From the NCBI GenBank assembly GCA_044892505.1, contig CM097882.1:309286783-309320000 (forward strand): 33,218 bases of DNA, given 5' to 3'. The DNA comes from Schmidtea nova (taxonomy: Eukaryota). Positions 615 through 25,447 of the stretch are shown here, piece by piece. How positions within the stretch are numbered: the first letter of the stretch is position 1; each line of letters begins with the position of its first letter. The notes beneath the pieces were generated by a model, which was given only the letters and a program-made list of their open reading frames with translations, was not told where the DNA came from and did not search any database. The position numbers were made by a program, and so were the translations under genes.

Positions 615-665
615 AGAGCTTGGTTGAATTTCTCCACAGTGCCATTCATAGCACTGTGTCAGAAA
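615..665 (-). pseudogene. Degenerate 51-nt 28S rRNA fragment from just upstream of the R2 target
   Basis: Reverse complement TTTCTGACACAGTGCTATGAATGGCACTGTGGAGAAATTCAACCAAGCTCT matches conserved 28S TTTCTGCCCAGTGCTCTGAATGTCAAAGTGAAGAAATTCAA. It shares the GTGCTATG and AAGCTCT variants with the copy at 3464-3539. Confidence 0.75.
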
Positions 666-2360: not shown

Positions 2361-3340
2361 TATAAACAAACAACCCAAGATGCCAACTTGAACCTCAACT
2401 TATTAAAAATACAAATGCTGAAGATGCAATGAAACGAACTCGAGATCCCATCTCGGAACCGAGCTTGATAGAAGATTATGTGAAACCTCGATGGAAGTAA
2501 GCCCATGCTACTCTTACAGCTGGGCTAATCCGAAAGGATTATACCTAGCTCACCAGAGATAGGATTTTTTTTAATAAATCTTATGTTATTAAAAAAAAAC
2601 CGGGAGTAGATTAGCCTCAGAGCTAACCGGCCCTATAAAGGACAGCACCCACCATGTTTCCTCGGCCGGGCGGCACCGAGTTTTTCATTCAAATCAATCT
2701 ACCAGCGACAACCGTACTAATTAAGCGTTCTCCAACATTAGCATGTTGAGTCTTAAATTAGCTTCGTGCACGAACGGATCTTGGATCGTATACTACGGGG
2801 GGCGATCCAATTTCCTATAGAACATAGAAAAAAGGGGCTCATGTCGTAGAAGATCGAGATCACCTCTTAGTTACGGGAACAAATCGAACGCGACAGGGAC
2901 CTGCTCCCCTGTTTTATCCAAGGCCATTGCTGGTCCTCGGGCCTATCCGGTGCCACTTTCGTGGGCTTATCATGTTAATCAAGCTATTTTTGACAGGTTC
3001 TGCGGGCATCTAACAATTTGAAGACATCAAATTGTATACTAGAGAAGCGAACTTATTCACTAACTAGTCAGGCGAAAGTTAAAATTATTTCGGGTTGCCC
3101 CAAAATACCCTTAACCAGCTTTGCAAACAAGCAAACATTGAATGAATTACTGAAATGTATCTTGCCATACCATTAAACAACGTTAAACTACAACCAAGAC
3201 CGTTGGGTCTTATCCCTCTGTAGGAAGGGAAACTGATGAGGAACATAAAATGTATCTAGAGATACCCTTCCATCAGTTCGGCGCCAAACATTAACTATTA
3301 ACATTTTGCAATGTATCTAGATAAACCAGTTAATGAGTGA

Positions 3341-3487
3341 CTCGGGAGTTAGTACAGTTCACCGAAGCAAACCGTTGCAGCTGGACCGTGTGCAGGTCTT
3401 CCTGAAAACGACTTTATCGCTACGCGACAAAATCCCTACAACTCAAGCGCCCCGAAGGGTCTGAAGAGAGTCATAGTTACTCCAGCC
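3341..3487 (-). ncRNA. HDV-like self-cleaving ribozyme at the element 5' junction
   Basis: P1 GGCUGG(A)/(U)CCAGCU with G-U at +1. P3 ACC/GGU. L3 UGCACAC. P1.1 GC/GC. P4 is 9 bp with a C(UUCG)G loop. J4/2 ACUAA, with the catalytic C at 3352. P2 GGAAG/CUCCC has one mismatch. Order and spacing fit the HDV double pseudoknot. Confidence 0.85.
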
Positions 3488-3539
3488 GTTAACCAGAGCT
3501 TAGTTGAATTTCTTCACATTGACATTCATAGCACTGGGC
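3464..3539 (-). pseudogene. 76-nt 28S rRNA fragment ending at the R2-type insertion site
   Basis: Reverse complement GCCCAGTGCTATGAATGTCAATGTGAAGAAATTCAACTAAGCTCTGGTTAACGGCTGGAGTAACTATGACTCTCTT is followed by non-rDNA instead of AAGGTAGCC. Confidence 0.93.
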
Positions 3540-3913
3540 TGTCCCCACAGGGCATTGACACAACATTGAAACCTGACCTGCTGATCAAATCAAGTAGAAC
3601 AATGGATAACATACACATCCTGGATATAAAGGTGCCATATGAAAGTCAGGAGAACTTTGATAATGCTCGCAATAACAACTATGCAAAGTACAAGTCCCTT
3701 GCTATGGATCTAGGAAAAGTGCATAAGAAAAGAGTAACTGTTTCAGCACTTGTTATTGGAACCCTTGGATCCTGGGACAATGCCAACGAACCAGGACTAA
3801 AGAAGATAGGCCTTACTAAAACCGAAATAAAGGCTCTTGCCAGAAAATGCGCCATCAATGCAGTTGTCGCAAGCTACCACATCTACCGAGAACACACGTC
3901 CAGAAGCAAATAA
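3540..3913 (+). pseudogene. C-terminal restriction-like endonuclease domain of a non-LTR retrotransposon (NeSL/R5/Utopia-like)
   Basis: KPDL...ILDIKVPYE...AR...KY...ALVIGTLGSW...IYREH gives the PD-(D/E)xK RLE signature. 5'-truncated at the junction. Confidence 0.85.
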
Positions 3914-4182
3914 TATCAAATGTTAAAAACTAAAGCCATTCTAAGAGTGAGCACGCTCCTCTTTTAGCCTTAATTGGCGCCGATTTCTTTTGAAATCTTT
4001 TGTTATTGAATAAAATTTAATTTTTTTTTATGTCGCGTTAAAGCCGTTTACCAGCCTAAATTATAATTTGTTGAAATAACTTTTCTAGTTTTTAAAAATA
4101 CTGCAACGTAATATATATTTAGTCATAATTCTCTATCATTTTCTTGAACTTGATTTGATGATGTTAATACCTTTACTGCCTC

Positions 4183-4330: not shown

Positions 4331-7300
4331 ATGAACATTATAACAAGTTTTATGAACGAAAACCCAAGTGGAAAAGAAAATGGTAAATTTATTTTTTAAT
4401 TTTTTATCATTTAGTATTAATTTAGGTAATATCAATAATTCAATTGGGAAATCGATGCTAGAAAATGCGGAAGAAAATGGTACTTAATTATTACCTTAGT
4501 AAATTATTTAACTTTTACTTTAGGTGATGTAAATATGACTGGACAAACTACCGTACAAGCTGAGATTGTTAATAATGAGAATATTATGAATAATGGAGTT
4601 ATACCTGATATGGTATTGAATGTCCAATGTAAGTATTGATTAATTTTAATTAATTTGATTATATTTTGATAATTAATTTAATCAATTTAGTAAATAACTT
4701 TAGTAAAATATTTGTAAATATATATTTTTGGTAATATTTTGTAATAATTTAAATAATCTTTACCTTACGTAAACAGTTAATTTAAACAAATTCCTTTAAT
4801 ATTATTTTGTAATAAGTTTTATATTAAATTTAAATTTTTTTAGAAATTATTATATTTAAATCATATTTATTTTAAATTTCATATTTATTTTCTAATAATT
4901 CATACTTTTATTAATTTATTTTAATGATTTTTTGATAAATTTAAAGATATTTCATATTAAGGTAAATTTTATGCGAATTATTGTAAGTCGACAAATCATA
5001 ACGACTGCCACAAATTAATGGAGCGATACTATCGTATTATAAATAACCAAGTCACCTTCTATTTATGTCCCACGTGTAAGAGCGCCCAACATATAAATTA
5101 CATTGATTTTTATTTCCAACATTATCTCCATTTAAATCAATTCTTATGTACTAAGAAAAGTCTTTTCACATTAATTAATAAAAGTAAACGACGAAATGTT
5201 ACTGTTTGTCCTAAACCGGCTAAAATAATTGTAATATCCGATGATAAAGATGTCCATTCACCAAATGACGATGTTTTAGTTATTCCTAATTTACATGTTG
5301 TCCAATATGGCGGTTCTGTTGAACCTTTGATTAAATATAATTTGAACAAATCGTATGCCATTGTTAAAATGGATGTGGATTCTTTAAATTTAAATTAATT
5401 AATTATTCCTTCGCCTTTATTAAATAAATTTAATTCAGTTATTTCCAAAATGGGATATGTAAAAGTACAGTTTTGCATTGATGTAGAATTTGAAAAAACT
5501 GGGGAATTTCAATCTTTTATAATATCAAATTCCGCAAAGCCAATGAGTGATACCTTTTTAGATGAAGGTATTGCTCTATTAAGTGAAAAAATGACTAAAG
5601 TCTGTGAAAATGGCAGCAATTGGTCAATTAATAAAATTAAAGAAATAAGCTTTAAACTTACAAAATATTCCCAAATAAGTAGATTGAGTGGTCACGGTTC
5701 TTGTTCAACCCCACCATCATTAAAGGCAAAACATTGCAGTGTCAATGTAAAGAATACAGATAAATTGTGTTTTATATAGTATTTTGGCAATTTTAAAATA
5801 CAAGGATGTGAAATCTAATAGAAGTAAGTTTTATAATTATAATCCCTCAGACCTTGTGTTTGAGCCTTCTGATTTTCCAATGAAATTATGTAATATCCCC
5901 AAATTTGAAGCGAAAACCCTGGACTGGCTATAAATATCCTTTTATATGATGAGTATTATCTAAATAATATTAATGAAGAGGAGGAAGTCATGAAACATCC
6001 ATTTGTAGATATTATTCATAGGTCAAAGGTTGTAGGCGGCACTCCAATTAATTTGATTTTGTTAGAGGAAAATGACTTTTCATTATATTGCAGTTACCAA
6101 TATTAATAGACTTTTGAATTGTGACACTCTTTCTGTTACTGATGTTCAAATAGGGTGCACTTGGTGCGAGCGTTGCTTGAATGGTTTTAGATTGACTGAA
6201 GCTTTTGAGAAACATCATGCTTTATGCATAAAAAACCAGTTAGGTACAACTTTATACACTTTACCTTCAGATAAGAACTTGGAATTAAAGATTGGTCAAA
6301 GATTGTTACCCCTCCTTTTGTTGTATATGCTGATTTTGAGGCTGTTTTACCCAAGGACGATAAGTATTTTCAACGTCACTTGCCTATCTCTGCTGGCTTG
6401 TTGCTTATTAATAACTTTACTGGCGAAAAATCGTGTAAAAGGTTTTATGGTCTTAACTGTGTAGAAGAGTTTTTGACCGAAATCAATGATATAGGAGAAA
6501 AAGTAGTTTTACCTTACTTTATAAATAATTCCAAAAAGAAAATGGAATATCTTTCCCCTGCACAAATAAGATCATTTTGTAGTTCTATAATTTGTTATTT
6601 GTGTAATAAACCTTTGAAAAATCCGGTTAAAGATCATGACCATTATACAGGTAAATACTTGGGTGCGGCTTCCTCTGAATGCAATTTTTCTCGGCAAATA
6701 AGATTCATCATGCCAGTCATATTTCATAATTTACGCGGATATGATTTGCATCATATCCTCAAGTATGGTTTAAATAAATTGGATAAATGGAATATAAGTT
6801 GTATTCCTACTACAAATGAAAAGTTTTTGACTTTATATGCAAGAGTCGATAGTTTAACTATTAAATTTATCGATTCTTGCCAATTTGTAAGCTGTAACTT
6901 AAACGATGCTGTAAAGACTTTAACAGATTTTCCTCTTACTTCATCCGAATTTATAGGGACTATTATTACTTCCAAAGGCATATTCCCATAAAATTTTGCA
7001 ACATCTTTAGAGGTTTTACAAAATACATACGAGTTGCCACCGATTTGGAAGGGAGTTAATATTGACGAATATGAAAAAGCTCAACAGATATGGGATGAAT
7101 TTAATTGTGAAACATTGTTTGATTATATGATGCTATATCTGAAATTGGATGTTTTCTTACTTGCCGACTTTTTTCAGCAATTTAGGGCAAATTCCATTAC
7201 ACATAACCGACTTGAGCCTCTTAATTTCTTGGGAATTCCAGGCATGTCATGGAATTCCGCTTTGATGACTTTGAAATCTCCAATTGAATTGCTTCAAGAT

Positions 7301-8707
7301 ATGGAGATGTATAATTTTTTGAAAGGAGATCCGTGGTAGGTTAACATTTGTTAACAAACACCATGTAGTATCCTCCGACAACACTGAGCTTCTTTATATA
7401 GATATAAATAATTTATATGGGTGGGACTTAAGCCAAAAACTACCTTATAAAGAATTTAAATGGGTAACTGATAGGGAAAAATTAAATAAAATAATTTATT
7501 ACTGTGAATCTGTTGATTTAGAAGTATTAACAATTGGATTTACATTAAAAGTCGATTTAGAAATTCCTGATTCGATTCACGACAAGCTGGATGATTTGCC
7601 AGTTGCCGCTGAAAAGATGTGTCCACCTGGCTCAAAGGTTGAGAAGTTGATGCTTACGCATTATCCCAAGAAGAACTATGTTCTTCATTGGAGACTTCTC
7701 AAACTTTTTCTTTCTCTTGGAGTAAAAATAAATCATGTCCATAGGGCAATTAAATTTAAACAAGCATGTATTTTTAAGGATTACATCGATACCAATACCA
7801 GACTTAGAGCAGAATCAAGTAATGCTCTGGGTAAAAATTATTATAAATTATTAAATAATAGTCTCTACGGTAAAACCGTAGAGAATCTTAAAAAGCGCAT
7901 AAATTTAAGATTATGTAATTCGGCTTCTAGGCTGATTACATATACTTCTAAGCCAAATTTCAAAAGGACTTTCAAAATTGACGATGATTTGGTTGCCGTC
8001 TTACTGAATAAAGATTCGGTGTGTTTGGATAGACCCAGTTACATTGGTCAAACTGTACTGGATCTATCTAAACTTAGAATGTACCAGCTGCAGTATGAAG
8101 AGTTACAAAAATATCGTAACGAATTCAACTGCGAAATCAACATCGTAGCTGGTGACACTGATTCATTTTTTCTTGAGATTAGAAATTGTAAGCTTGATAT
8201 TCTTTTACCGGTCATGATAAGAGATAACTTACTTGACACTTCTAATTATGATCCGAATCACCCATTATATAGTAGGAACCTTGATTCTGTCATTGGCAAA
8301 TTCAAAGACGAGAATAAAGGGCTTAAATACGAGGAGTGGGTGTTTCTTAGACCTAAATGTAATAGTCTTTTAGGTGACGAGGAAACTAATAAAGCTAAAG
8401 GGGCAACATTATCGGATACTGACATAAAGCATCAGTCGTACCTGGACTGTTTTAATAATAACCAAATATTTTCTGTTCCCCAAACGAGAATCACAAGTAA
8501 AAATCACCAACTTTTTACTATTAAAAATGAAAGACTGCACTGACAAATGCAGATGATAAAAGGAAATGGGTTGCGAAAAATAAAAGCTTGGCATATGGCC
8601 ATTATATGGGAGGTGACTTGGTTATATTTCAACATACCGATCCAAGAATCAATCCAGATCAACAATTTCAAGATCAAACTGAAGAAGAAACAGTTTTATT
8701 TAAATAA
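4331..8707 (+). pseudogene. polB: Spliced protein-primed family-B DNA polymerase (Polinton/Maverick type), inactivated by stops and frameshifts
   Basis: Exo motifs YADFE, FHNLRGYD and YLKLDV; Pol motifs DINNLYG, KLLNNSLYGK and GDTDS; KFKDE and KAKG. Predicted introns 4383-4425, 4480-4523 and 4629-4961 keep frame into ORF 5018. In-frame stop at 5396 and several frameshifts downstream. Confidence 0.92.
6593..6685 (+). other. Endonuclease VII (His-Me finger) domain embedded in PolB
   Basis: CYLCNKPL...VKDHDHYTGKYLGAA..ECN pattern between the ExoI and ExoII motifs. Confidence 0.8.
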
Positions 8708-24739: not shown

Positions 24740-25126
24740 GAACCGAAAGTTGGTGAACTATGCATGTGTAGGTTGAAGTCAGGGGAAACATTGATGGAGG
24801 ACCGTAGCGGTTCTGACGTGCAAATCGATCGTTGGACATCAGTATAGCTGTGAAAGACTAATCGACCCATCTAGTAGCAGTTTCTTTCCGAGGTTTCCCT
24901 CAGAATAGCTGACATTTGTTGTAGTTTAACCTGGTAAAGCGAATGATTAGAAGTATTGGGGACGAAATGTTCTCAACTTATTCTCAAACTTTAAATGGGT
25001 TTGATGTATGTATTTCTTCATTAAAGATGTACTTTGAATACGAATGTTTAGTGGGCAATTTTTGGTAAGCAGAACAGGCGATGTGGGATGAACCAAACAT
25101 CTGGTTAAGGTGCCTAACAAAACGCT
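24740..25126 (+). pseudogene. ~390-bp decayed 28S rRNA fragment
   Basis: Co-linear matches to CCGAAAGATGGTGAACTATGC, CTGACGTGCAAATCG, GAAAGACTAATCGAACCATCTAGTAGC, GGTAAAGCGAATGATTAG, CTCAAACTTTAAATGG and TTTTGGTAAGCAGAAC, with substitutions at conserved sites. Confidence 0.93.
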
Positions 25127-25127
25127 A

Positions 25128-25447
25128 CAGCGCCATCCATTTTCAGAGCTGGTTGATTCGGAGTATTGGTTGATCCTTGGTTGGAGTATTCGAGCCAATC
25201 AGATAAGTGCTTTTGTTTTACTTGCCCGAAATTTGCACATTGTTCTGATGAAAATGTAGACACTTTTACTGTAACTGGATACTCTAATTGGGAAAGTGCT
25301 ACAGGTCAAAAGAATGGCTTAAGTAAACACGAGAGTTCAGAAGTTAATTTAAATGCGATAAAATGTTGGCAAGAAAAGCAGATGAGAGAAAAGCAAGGCA
25401 AAATTAAAGTAAGCATGTTTAAAAATTTTAAAAAGATTAGTAGTTAA
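25128..25447 (+). pseudogene. TTF-type zinc finger, N-terminus of a hAT transposase
   Basis: FQSW...PWLEYSSQSDKCFCFTC..F.......FTVTGYSNW......LSKHESS..H/N. Confidence 0.85.

What the first reader, a model, noticed from the sequence alone, without database searches (positions are those of the whole stretch)
3341..3487. Complete HDV-like ribozyme whose P1 is supplied by host 28S rRNA
Seen: on the - strand every HDV element occurs in order (P1 with G-U at +1, a J1/2 with two hairpins, P2, P3, a 7-nt L3, P1.1, a UUCG-capped 9-bp P4, and CUAA J4/2). The predicted cut is 5' of G3487, which is 28 nt upstream of the canonical TTAAGG^TAGC site. Known: R2 elements release themselves from 28S co-transcripts with such ribozymes. 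Inference: this is the 5' end of an rDNA-targeted element, and the only coding remnant beside it looks NeSL/R5-like, a group for which I do not recall a described ribozyme.
Basis: partly seen in the sequence, partly recalled or inferred. Interest (0 to 1): 0.85.

Follow-up and report, generated by a model that had tools for sequence, protein, structure and literature searches.

The report
Decayed R2-type ribozyme on a non-autonomous element
The stretch is a dead, scattered copy of a short non-coding parasite of the R2 retrotransposon that sits at the classic R2 site of 28S rRNA genes and carries the already-described R2-type HDV-like self-cleaving ribozyme, so it is a real feature of an ordinary, known kind.

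Summary
On the - strand, 3487-3344 carries every HDV-like element in the canonical order, and the predicted cut 5' of G3487 is position -28 of the R2 site.

- **Owner of the ribozyme.** It belongs to a ~985-bp ORF-less element inserted exactly at the R2 site of this genome's rDNA. About 40 junction-bearing copies are assembled.
- **Origin of that element.** Its 3' ~660 nt are 88% identical to the 3' UTR of a bona fide autonomous R2 (1021-aa ORF, E = 2e-132 to Bombyx R2). It is therefore an R2 SIDE-like derivative, not a NeSL/R5 element.
- **The neighbouring endonuclease ORF.** It lies on the opposite strand and is a separate, 5'-truncated insertion into the 28S leader.
- **Prior knowledge.** Cleavage at -28 with P1 supplied by 28S is the commonest R2 configuration (Eickbush 2013) and was predicted for planaria.
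- **State of the window copy.** It is a relic. It lacks its last ~32 nt and any 3' 28S. It has a mutated conserved L3 G (A3389) and a P2 mismatch. Its perfect P1 comes from a G-to-T change in its own 28S leader; 28 of 29 copies have a G.A mismatch at -25.
- **Covariation.** Among the copies it is uninformative. The parent R2's differently sequenced ribozyme, with the same architecture, gives the comparative support.

The scan noted the same element elsewhere in this genome (s1-385658).

The parts
3461..3539 (-). [quoted passage not shown] It carries the species-specific TTCAG and one private change, U3484, where the native base at -25 is G.
   Evidence: Rfam LSU_rRNA_eukarya 70.3 bits, E = 2.2e-16. 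Blast to native 28S 98.7%. Native sequence in L032.
3481..3487 (-). P1 5' strand (GGCUGGA). The predicted scissile bond is 5' of G3487, which is -28.
   Evidence: Pairs o==-== with 3384-3379. The numbering matches the -28 site of Eickbush 2013.
2597..3460 (-). Body of a non-autonomous, ORF-less R2-derived element (SIDE-like). This copy reaches position ~953 of 985, so it lacks the last ~32 nt and any downstream 28S.
   Evidence: Blast to the rDNA-inserted copy L031 675-1659. 3' divergence point from the alignment. No ORF of 100 aa or more in the rDNA copy.
3405..3460 (-). J1/2 region. Contains hairpin CCC-UUCG-GGG (3459-3450), which is conserved in all copies and in the parent R2, and a second hairpin (~3434-3411) found only in this subfamily.
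   Evidence: MFE fold. Alignment of 30 copies. Parent R2 5' end.
3398..3402 (-). P2 5' strand (GGAAG).
   Evidence: Pairs ==x-= with 3348-3344. Relative to the family consensus GGGAA/UUCCC it has one compensatory A-U to G-C change and one A.C mismatch.
3385..3397 (-). P3 (ACC/GGU) enclosing the 7-nt L3 (UGCACAC). A3389 replaces the G that all other copies have at L3 position 6.
   Evidence: L3 is UGCACGC in 15 loci, UGCACGU in 13, and UGCACAC only in this copy. Eickbush 2013 names a conserved C and a conserved G in L3 without giving their positions; that A3389 is that G is inferred from the CG shared by both lineages here.
3377..3384 (-). P1 3' strand (CCAGCU) followed by P1.1 (GC, which pairs with G3393 C3392 of L3).
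3354..3375 (-). P4, a 9-bp stem with a UUCG tetraloop.
   Evidence: Recovered in the MFE folds. Invariant among copies.
3344..3352 (-). J4/2 CUAA (candidate catalytic C3352) followed by the P2 3' strand CUCCC.
   Evidence: Fits the CNRA-type J4/2 directly abutting P2'. The same ACUAA occurs in the parent R2's ribozyme.
3540..4031 (+). Separate, 5'-truncated insertion of an RLE-type non-LTR element (ORF 3566-3913, restriction-like endonuclease C-terminus). It is antisense to the 28S leader that it splits. It is not part of the ribozyme-bearing element.
   Evidence: ORF list. Weak hits to the R2 protein RLE domain (E = 4e-3). 28% identity to this genome's R2. Superfamily of >2000 candidate copies. 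Flanking 28S pieces.
4032..4056 (-). Upstream remainder of the same 28S leader (-114 to -90).
   Evidence: Blast, 96% over 25 nt.

Best explanation
Window 2597-3539 (- strand) is a decayed, off-rDNA copy of a short non-coding derivative of the R2 retrotransposon (a SIDE-like parasite of R2), together with the stretch of 28S rRNA that lay upstream of it.

How the active copies are inferred to work:
1. In rDNA copies the element sits exactly at the R2 site and is co-transcribed with 28S rRNA by RNA polymerase I.
2. Its first ~115 nt plus 28S positions -28 to -22 fold into an HDV-like double-pseudoknot ribozyme.
3. The ribozyme is expected to cut 5' of G(-28). This frees an RNA that keeps a 27-nt 28S leader.
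4. The element's 3' region, copied from the 3' UTR of the autonomous R2 of the same genome, would be bound by that R2's protein, which reverse-transcribes it into a new 28S gene.

Shown here: the insertion site, the lack of coding capacity, the R2 pedigree, the presence and conservation of every ribozyme element, and the same architecture built from different sequence in the parent R2.

Inferred: the self-cleavage itself and mobilisation in trans.

The window copy is almost certainly inert:
- It is outside rDNA.
- It lacks its 3' end.
- Its L3 carries A where all other copies carry the conserved G.
- Its P2 has a mismatch.
- Its textbook-perfect P1 is an accident of a G-to-T change in its own dead leader.
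For: - **Insertion site.** In rDNA (L031) a 985-bp insertion without an ORF lies between ...CTCTTCAG and TAGCCAAATGCC of 28S.
- **Window copy.** It matches this element from the junction to position ~953.
- **Autonomous R2 in the genome.** L075 holds a 1021-aa ORF with E = 2e-132 to R2Bm (8gh6) over residues 25-999.
- **Pedigree.** The SIDE's 3' 666 nt are 88% identical to that R2's 3' UTR, and the first 25 nt are shared.
- **Ribozyme conservation.** All helices are present in 29 copies. A covariance model of the core finds about 33 copies at 75-97 bits.
- **Comparative support.** The parent R2 has, about 150 nt downstream of its own 28S junction, the same architecture with different letters:
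  - P2 GUAGAG/CUCUAC, versus GGGAA/UUCCC in the SIDE
  - P3 ACC/GGU, the same in both
  - L3 UUCUCGA
  - P1' UACUCCU, pairing perfectly with 28S -25..-19 with G.U at +1
  - P4 of 7 bp, with unrelated sequence
  - J4/2 ACUAA
- **Independent pointer to that site.** It is the top hit of the SIDE-trained model in the 9-kb locus (E = 0.46).
- **Literature.** -28 is the most frequent R2 cleavage site and is predicted for planaria (PMC3774820). R2 SIDEs with ribozymes are described in Drosophila (PMC3414825, listed).
- **Copies with processed-looking 5' ends:**
  - L055 is a complete SIDE copy in non-28S DNA whose leader starts at -28..-30.
  - A SIDE contig in three runs starts at -26/-25.
  - The R2 copy in L075 starts at -23.
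Against: - No cleavage assay or RNA 5'-end data exist. The runs that hold the element are contigs of unknown kind.
- With the native 28S, P1 has a central G.A mismatch at -25 in 28 of 29 copies. A P1 mismatch at the same position abolished in vitro cleavage of horseshoe-crab R2.
- rDNA copies have G-C rather than G.U at +1.
- Most off-rDNA copies carry 28S leaders of 106-115 nt rather than 27 nt. Their template RNAs were therefore not cut at -28.
- No Rfam HDV-type family matches, even at E up to 10.
- Covariation within the family is not significant: one double change, reached by 172 of 500 shuffles.
- Thermodynamic z-scores are modest (-2.3 for the full region; -0.3 to -1.8 for the cores).
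Confidence: 0.8

Rival explanations
1. The fold is a genuine descendant of an R2 ribozyme, but it is crippled or dead across the whole SIDE family, not only in this window. Under this reading the element's RNA 5' end is made some other way: uncleaved co-transcripts, another processing site, or a reverse-transcription stop about 106-115 nt upstream.
For: - G.A mismatch at -25 in P1 in 28 of 29 copies.
- The horseshoe-crab precedent for inactivity with a mismatch at the same position.
- At least 10 independent off-rDNA copies with exact 3' ends and no downstream 28S have leaders ending at -106..-115.
- 33 of 40 junction-bearing copies have leaders of at least 40 nt.
Against: - The core is almost invariant over copies that differ by 10-25% elsewhere, which suggests constraint on the source copies.
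- The L3 CG, J4/2 CUAA, P1.1 and P3 are all intact in the rDNA copies.
- A few copies do start at -25..-30.
- Eickbush 2013 notes that about a quarter of R2 ribozymes have P1 mismatches.
- A bulged-A register gives 5-6 uninterrupted pairs (by inspection).
Confidence: 0.3
2. One reading: the ribozyme is the 5' end of a NeSL/R5-like element whose coding remnant is the adjacent endonuclease ORF. That would be the first ribozyme for that clade.
For: - The ORF 3566-3913 is an RLE domain only distantly like R2's.
- It lies 26 nt from the 28S leader.
- Planarian LIN/R5-lineage elements are known to include 28S-specific families (PMC4640811).
Against: - The ORF is on the opposite strand, and its 3' end points away from the ribozyme.
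- It interrupts the 28S leader, with 28S on both sides.
- Insertions of different length lie at that same 28S position in other loci (L002, L003, L006, L014, L024), and RLE ORFs of various subfamilies lie antisense upstream of SIDE copies at several loci, L002 and L006 among them.
- rDNA copies of the ribozyme-bearing element have no such ORF nearby.
- The element's 3' end is R2-derived.
Confidence: 0.02
3. The back-to-back arrangement (antisense RLE piece, then 28S, then the element) is a twin-priming or inversion product of a single uncleaved 28S/element co-transcript. This was another note on the same window.
For: The head-to-head geometry at 2600-4020, and long 28S leaders showing that uncleaved RNAs were reverse-transcribed.
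Against: - The antisense piece is not an inverted copy of the SIDE or of R2. It encodes a different protein family (28% identity to R2), with thousands of copies of its own.
- Other loci have insertions of different length (32-844 bp) at the same 28S position, -88/-86, and RLE pieces 50-89% identical to the window's lie antisense upstream of SIDE copies at several loci. This is the signature of independent site-specific insertions.
Confidence: 0.03

Closest known systems
R2 retrotransposon HDV-like ribozymes that cleave at 28S position -28 (Eickbush, Burke & Eickbush 2013, PLoS One 8:e66441; silkmoth, earwig, zebra finch, flour beetle A; predicted for planaria)
   Same: - Location at the 5' end of an R2-site insertion.
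- P1 5' strand taken from 28S -28..-22.
- P1 of 6-7 bp, P2 of 5 bp, P3 of 3 bp, a 7-nt L3 with conserved C and G, and a C in J4/2.
- A large J1/2 that contains the rest of the 28S leader.
- A uniform 5' junction.
   Different: - It sits on a non-coding derivative rather than on the autonomous element.
- With the native 28S, P1 has a G.A mismatch at -25. The horseshoe-crab R2, which has a mismatch there, was inactive in vitro.
- rDNA copies have G-C, not G.U, at +1.
- Activity is untested.
R2 SIDEs (short internally deleted, non-autonomous R2 elements) of Drosophila (Eickbush & Eickbush 2012, Mob DNA 3:10)
   Same: - ORF-less element at the R2 site.
- Keeps a 5' ribozyme.
- Keeps the 3' UTR needed for recognition by R2 protein.
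- Many copies.
   Different: - Different host: an AT-rich 1.25-Gb invertebrate genome, probably a flatworm (inferred, not shown).
- Cleavage is predicted in 28S (-28) rather than at the element's own 5' end.
- The SIDE's ribozyme core differs in sequence and in cleavage register (-28 versus -25) from that of the R2 that donated its 3' end.
Ribozyme of the autonomous R2 lineage of the same genome (L075, called 'R2-A' here)
   Same: - The first 25 nt after the junction are shared.
- P3 ACC/GGU, L3 of the form U...CG., and J4/2 ACUAA.
- The overall order of helices.
   Different: - P1' pairs with 28S -25..-19 (perfect, with G.U at +1) instead of -28..-22.
- P2 and P4 have unrelated sequences.
- J1/2 is about 100 nt longer.
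R5/LIN lineage (NeSL clade) 28S-specific elements of planarians (Burke et al. 2003; Kojima & Jurka 2015, PMC4640811)
   Same: This concerns only the neighbouring + strand ORF: an RLE-type endonuclease, a very abundant family, and insertion into 28S sequence.
   Different: - It is not connected with the ribozyme.
- It is inserted antisense to the rRNA, about 87 nt upstream of the R2 site.
- Clade membership was not tested here.

Membership tests
HDV-like / R2-type self-cleaving ribozyme | Nested double-pseudoknot order: P1, (J1/2), P2, P3, L3, P3', P1', P1.1, P4, J4/2, P2' | tested here: met
   All segments are found in order in the window and in 29 copies. 98% of cells pair in the register given, against 21-47% when the partners are slid.
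HDV-like / R2-type self-cleaving ribozyme | P1 of 6-7 bp that starts at the cleavage site, usually with G.U at +1 | tested here: inconclusive
   - Window: 6-7 perfect pairs with G.U at +1, but only because of U3484.
- With native 28S: one G.A mismatch at -25 in 28 of 29 copies.
- +1 pair: G-C in the 12 rDNA-type loci, G.U in all the others.
HDV-like / R2-type self-cleaving ribozyme | Catalytic C in a CNRA-type J4/2 directly 5' of P2' | tested here: met
   CUAA at 3352-3349 is invariant in all copies and present in the parent R2. The catalytic role itself is not testable here.
HDV-like / R2-type self-cleaving ribozyme | Conserved L3 nucleotides (U at the first position; the conserved C and G named by Eickbush 2013) | tested here: not met
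   The window copy has A3389 where all other copies have G (UGCACAC versus UGCACGC/U). The family consensus and the parent R2 do meet the feature. One search does not give the positions of the conserved C and G; their identity with L3 positions 5-6 is inferred.
HDV-like / R2-type self-cleaving ribozyme | Covariation supporting the helices | tested here: inconclusive
   - Within the family: one double change in P2, not above the shuffles.
- Between the SIDE and the parent R2: three of five P2 pairs are changed on both sides and P4 is replaced entirely. That is only two lineages, aligned by hand.
HDV-like / R2-type self-cleaving ribozyme | Mg2+-dependent self-cleavage | not testable with these tools
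   No RNA runs with raw reads were available.
Rfam HDV-type families (HDV_ribozyme, CPEB3, drz-Agam and others) | A covariance-model hit | tested here: not met
   No such hit at the gathering threshold or at E up to 10. From my own knowledge, these models were not built from R2 ribozymes.
R2 SIDE (non-autonomous R2 derivative) | Inserted at the exact R2 site of 28S | tested here: met
   Junctions in L031 compared with the uninserted L032. 40 junction matches in the genome.
R2 SIDE (non-autonomous R2 derivative) | No protein-coding capacity, with ends derived from an autonomous R2 of the same genome | tested here: met
   - No ORF of 100 aa or more within the 985 bp.
- 88% identity over 666 nt to the R2 3' UTR.
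- The 5' 25 nt are shared.
- The R2 identity of the donor is confirmed.
NeSL/R5-lineage element carrying the ribozyme | Ribozyme and the RLE/RT ORF on the same strand of one element | tested here: not met
   The ORF is on the + strand and the ribozyme on the - strand. The ORF-bearing piece is flanked on both sides by 28S leader.

The most novel reading that the evidence does not exclude
The non-autonomous element carries a ribozyme module different from that of the R2 lineage that supplied its 3' end. Cleavage is at -28 rather than -25, and P1', P2 and P4 are unrelated in sequence. This would be a chimeric SIDE, or a cleavage-site shift caught within one genome.

Its P1 is mismatched, and most of its off-target retrocopies start 106-115 nt upstream in 28S. 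That would mean uncleaved or alternatively processed co-transcripts are the main transposition templates.

The 28S leaders these retrocopies carry are then repeatedly hit, at position -88/-86 and in antisense orientation, by a 28S-specific LIN/R5-like element.
Probability: 0.3. Interest if true: 0.45.

Novelty: new member of a known kind. Interest (0 to 1): 0.25.

Why it matters
It adds a probable flatworm example of two things already described. One is the R2 ribozyme that borrows its P1 from 28S rRNA at -28. The other is a non-autonomous R2 derivative that keeps only the ribozyme and the 3' UTR.

Its modest value is comparative:
- One genome holds two ribozymes of the same architecture with different cleavage registers (-28 and -25).
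- It holds a natural P1 mismatch at the position known to kill the horseshoe-crab ribozyme.
- It holds dozens of dated retrocopies whose leader lengths report on how often the RNA was actually cut.

It does not extend ribozymes to the NeSL/R5 clade, which was the feature that earned the high first-stage score.

Tried and rejected
- **Rfam.** Scans at the gathering threshold and at E up to 10 gave only LSU rRNA hits and no HDV-type family.
- **Hand-written HDV descriptor.** A loose version gave hundreds of chance hits in 650 kb and was abandoned. A stricter one (L3 U...CG., CNRA, five perfect P2 pairs) left 18 distinct instances. Only the SIDE and parent-R2 sites lie downstream of a 28S junction with a compact P4.
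- **MAFFT.** It could not align the SIDE and parent-R2 cores, so that comparison was made by hand.
- **SIDE-only covariance model.** With default filters it missed the parent R2. With filters off it ranked that site first, but only at E = 0.46.
- **Covariation within copies.** Not informative.
- **Thermodynamic folds.** They recover P2 and P4 in the rDNA-type and parent-R2 cores; in the window core they recover P4 and P3 but not P2. The z-scores are weak.
- **Pfam.** Nothing found in the 115-aa ORF.
- **Sequencing runs.** Only four contig-type runs of unknown kind hold the element, so RNA ends could not be read.
- **Literature.** The R5 paper (Burke 2003) is not held. The OCR of Kojima & Jurka's S6 Fig was too garbled to compare target sites.
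- **Genome-letter allowance.** The following could therefore not be read, and I did not try to get them by another route:
  - the second R2 lineage (54% aa identity, on rDNA contigs)
  - the weaker model hits (26-40 bits)
  - the eight junction copies lacking the SIDE-type core
- **Organism.** Not identified. "Flatworm" is an inference from the LIN-like superfamily and the genome's composition.

Full report
**1. The observation**

Reading the - strand from 3700 to 3200 shows a 28S rRNA segment at 3539-3461. Rfam's eukaryotic LSU model aligns it at 70 bits, E = 2e-16. It stops matching 28S at the R2 insertion site.

The native 28S of this genome (L032) reads ...AACGGCGGGAGTAAC...CTCTTCAGG^TAGCCAAATGCC. 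The site is therefore the classic R2 site with a species-specific C (TTCAGG for TTAAGG). G3487 lies 27 nt before the junction, which is -28 in the convention of Eickbush et al. 2013.

- P1: 3487-3482(81) pairs with 3384-3379, with G.U at +1.
- P2: 3402-3398 pairs with 3348-3344.
- P3: ACC/GGU.
- L3: 7 nt, 3394-3388.
- P1.1: GC/GC.
- P4: 9 bp with a UUCG cap, 3375-3354.
- J4/2: CUAA, with C3352.

**2. What the element is**

The region occurs in at least 40 places in the 1.25-Gb assembly. In rDNA contigs (L031 = C128) the same sequence begins a 985-bp insertion. It lies between ...CTCTTCAG and TAGCCAAATGCC of an otherwise intact 28S gene and has no ORF of 100 aa or more.

The genome also holds an autonomous R2. 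In L075 a 1021-aa ORF matches Bombyx R2 (8gh6) at E = 2e-132 over nearly its whole length, and its 3' junction is with TAGCCAAATGCC.

The short element's 3' 666 nt are 88% identical to this R2's 3' UTR. Its first 25 nt equal the R2's first 25 nt. It is thus an internally deleted, non-autonomous R2 derivative, the kind described as SIDEs in Drosophila (PMC3414825). A second R2 lineage (54% aa identity) also populates the rDNA contigs.

**3. The window copy is a relic**

- It lies on chromosome-scale contig C1, not in an rDNA array.
- It matches the element only to position ~953 of 985. It is followed by A/T-rich unrelated DNA instead of 28S.
- Its L3 reads UGCACAC, where all 28 other copies read UGCACG(C/U). 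Eickbush 2013 names a conserved C and a conserved G in L3 and reports that the inactive sow-bug ribozyme has changes at those sites, one of them G to A. The paper text gives no positions, so equating A3389 with that G is my inference from the CG shared by the SIDE and the parent R2.
- Its P2 has an A.C mismatch, alongside one genuine compensatory A-U to G-C change shared with L002.
- Its flawless P1 results from U3484. The native base at -25 is G, and 28 of 29 copies therefore have a G.A (or worse) mismatch in the middle of P1.

**4. Is the fold real?**

Within the family the core is nearly invariant, so covariation is not informative. There is one double change, equalled by 172 of 500 shuffles. 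The register is nevertheless sharply defined: 98% of cells pair, against 21-47% when the partners are slid.

The useful comparison is the parent R2. About 150 nt downstream of its own 28S junction, on the sense strand, it has:
- P2 GUAGAG/CUCUAC
- P3 ACC/GGU
- L3 UUCUCGA
- P1' UACUCCU
- a 7-bp P4 of unrelated sequence
- J4/2 ACUAA

Its P1' pairs perfectly with 28S -25..-19, with G.U at +1. That predicts cleavage at -25, a site Eickbush 2013 also reports for sea anemone B.

The SIDE-trained covariance model, run without filters, ranks this site first in the 9-kb locus, though only at E = 0.46. A stricter descriptor leaves 18 distinct instances in 650 kb. Only these two sites sit just downstream of a 28S junction with a compact P4.

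MFE folding recovers P2 and P4 in the rDNA-type and parent-R2 cores. In the window core it recovers P4 and P3 but not P2. Rfam has no matching family.

**5. Evidence on activity in vivo**

Evidence consistent with cleavage:
- L055 is a complete SIDE copy in non-28S DNA whose leader begins at -28..-30 and whose 3' end abuts non-28S DNA. This is what retrotransposition of a cleaved RNA would give.
- A contig present in three runs carries the SIDE core with a leader starting at -26/-25, next to unrelated DNA. Other flanks also abut at -25.
- The R2 copy in L075 starts at -23.
- Five further junction copies have leaders shorter than about 27 nt and lack the SIDE core.

Evidence against efficient cleavage:
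- 33 of 40 junction-bearing copies have leaders of at least 40 nt.
- At least ten independent off-rDNA copies have exact element 3' ends and no downstream 28S, yet their leaders end at -106..-115.
- Together with the P1 mismatch and the horseshoe-crab precedent, this leaves a real possibility that the SIDE ribozyme is inefficient.

**6. The neighbouring ORF**

ORF 3566-3913 (+) encodes the KPDL...D...K-type C-terminus of a restriction-like endonuclease. Its best solved relatives are R2 proteins, at E = 4e-3. It is only 28% identical over 90 aa to this genome's R2. It belongs to a superfamily with more than 2000 candidate copies and ORFs of up to 1115 aa. This fits the planarian LIN/R5 lineage of the NeSL clade (PMC4640811), but I did not test clade membership.

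It is antisense to the ribozyme. It lies inside the 28S leader: 28S -114..-90 is at 4056-4032 and -80..-2 at 3539-3461. Insertions of different length (32-844 bp) lie at that same point, -88/-86, in L002, L003, L006, L014 and L024, and RLE pieces 50-89% identical to the window's lie antisense upstream of SIDE copies at several loci, L002 and L006 among them. It is therefore a separate, apparently site-specific insertion, and neither the ribozyme's owner nor a twin-priming product.

**7. Comparison with what is known, and verdict**

R2 ribozymes that take P1 from 28S and cut at -28 are the most common R2 configuration and were predicted for planaria (PMC3774820). Non-autonomous R2 derivatives with ribozymes are also known (PMC3414825).

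This is a new member of a known kind, seen here as a dead copy. The high first-stage interest rested on the supposed NeSL/R5 link, which the anatomy contradicts.

What remains mildly interesting:
- the -28/-25 pair of ribozymes in one genome
- the natural -25 mismatch
- the long-leader retrocopies
- the antisense 28S-specific insertions

The scan had already noted the same element on another piece of this genome (s1-385658).

Noticed in passing
window 3540-4056; also L002, L003, L006, L014, L024, and loci paired (e.g. G000:C2:411641428-411645930): An RLE-type non-LTR element family (LIN/R5-like?) is repeatedly found inserted ANTISENSE into 28S sequence at about -88/-86 relative to the R2 site. 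The insertions vary in length (32-844 bp; variable 5' truncation inferred) and remove a few bp of target. RLE pieces of different subfamilies (50-89% aa identity to the window's) lie antisense upstream of SIDE copies at several loci. This looks like strand- and site-specific targeting of the 28S leader carried by dispersed SIDE retrocopies.
   Followed up: partly
L017, L019, L022, L026, and across the antisense insertion in window, L002, L003, L006, L014, L024: Off-rDNA SIDE copies with exact 3' ends and no downstream 28S have upstream 28S leaders that all stop between -106 and -115. This suggests a recurrent RNA 5' end or reverse-transcription stop about 110 nt upstream of the R2 site. It is unexplained.
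   Followed up: partly
L075 8666-8602 (- strand) = G000:C39: The autonomous R2 lineage has its own well-formed HDV-like ribozyme, predicted to cut at 28S -25. P1 is perfect with native 28S and has G.U at +1. This particular copy carries only 22 nt of 28S leader (-23 to -2), next to non-28S DNA, and has an (AAT)n/poly-T-filled 3-kb 5' UTR.
   Followed up: partly
G000:C39, C55, C10: A second R2 lineage (1015-aa ORF, 54% identical to the first) is present as identical copies on the rDNA contigs and as dozens of dispersed copies. Its 5' junction differs from the SIDE/R2-A junction. Its ribozyme could not be read.
   Followed up: no
L021, L023, L033 (G000:C10): On contig C10 the 28S sequence upstream of the SIDE is only about 89.6% identical to the main 28S over 1 kb. 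This is a divergent rDNA family that also carries the insertion.
   Followed up: no
G000:C1:193121710-193121743: A second copy carries the same -25 G-to-T change as the window's leader. It has a junction match but no SIDE-type core hit and no match to the 49-nt leader pattern at up to 3 mismatches. Its relationship to the window copy is unknown.
   Followed up: no
window 615-665 (-) and 24740-25165 (+): Further degenerate 28S fragments lie in the same window: 88% identity over 51 nt at 28S -85..-36, and two LSU hits covering Rfam model positions 813-1383 at 137 and 184 bits. rDNA debris is scattered through this region.
   Followed up: no
window ~5000-8550 (+): A run of + strand ORFs, including a 315-aa ORF at 7596-8543. 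By eye this looked like a family-B DNA polymerase of a Polinton/Maverick-like element. No search was run on it.
   Followed up: no
L031 890-1180: The rDNA copies on contig C128 (L031, L011, L012) contain an internal tandem duplication of ~145 bp. The window copy and the other copies examined lack it.
   Followed up: no
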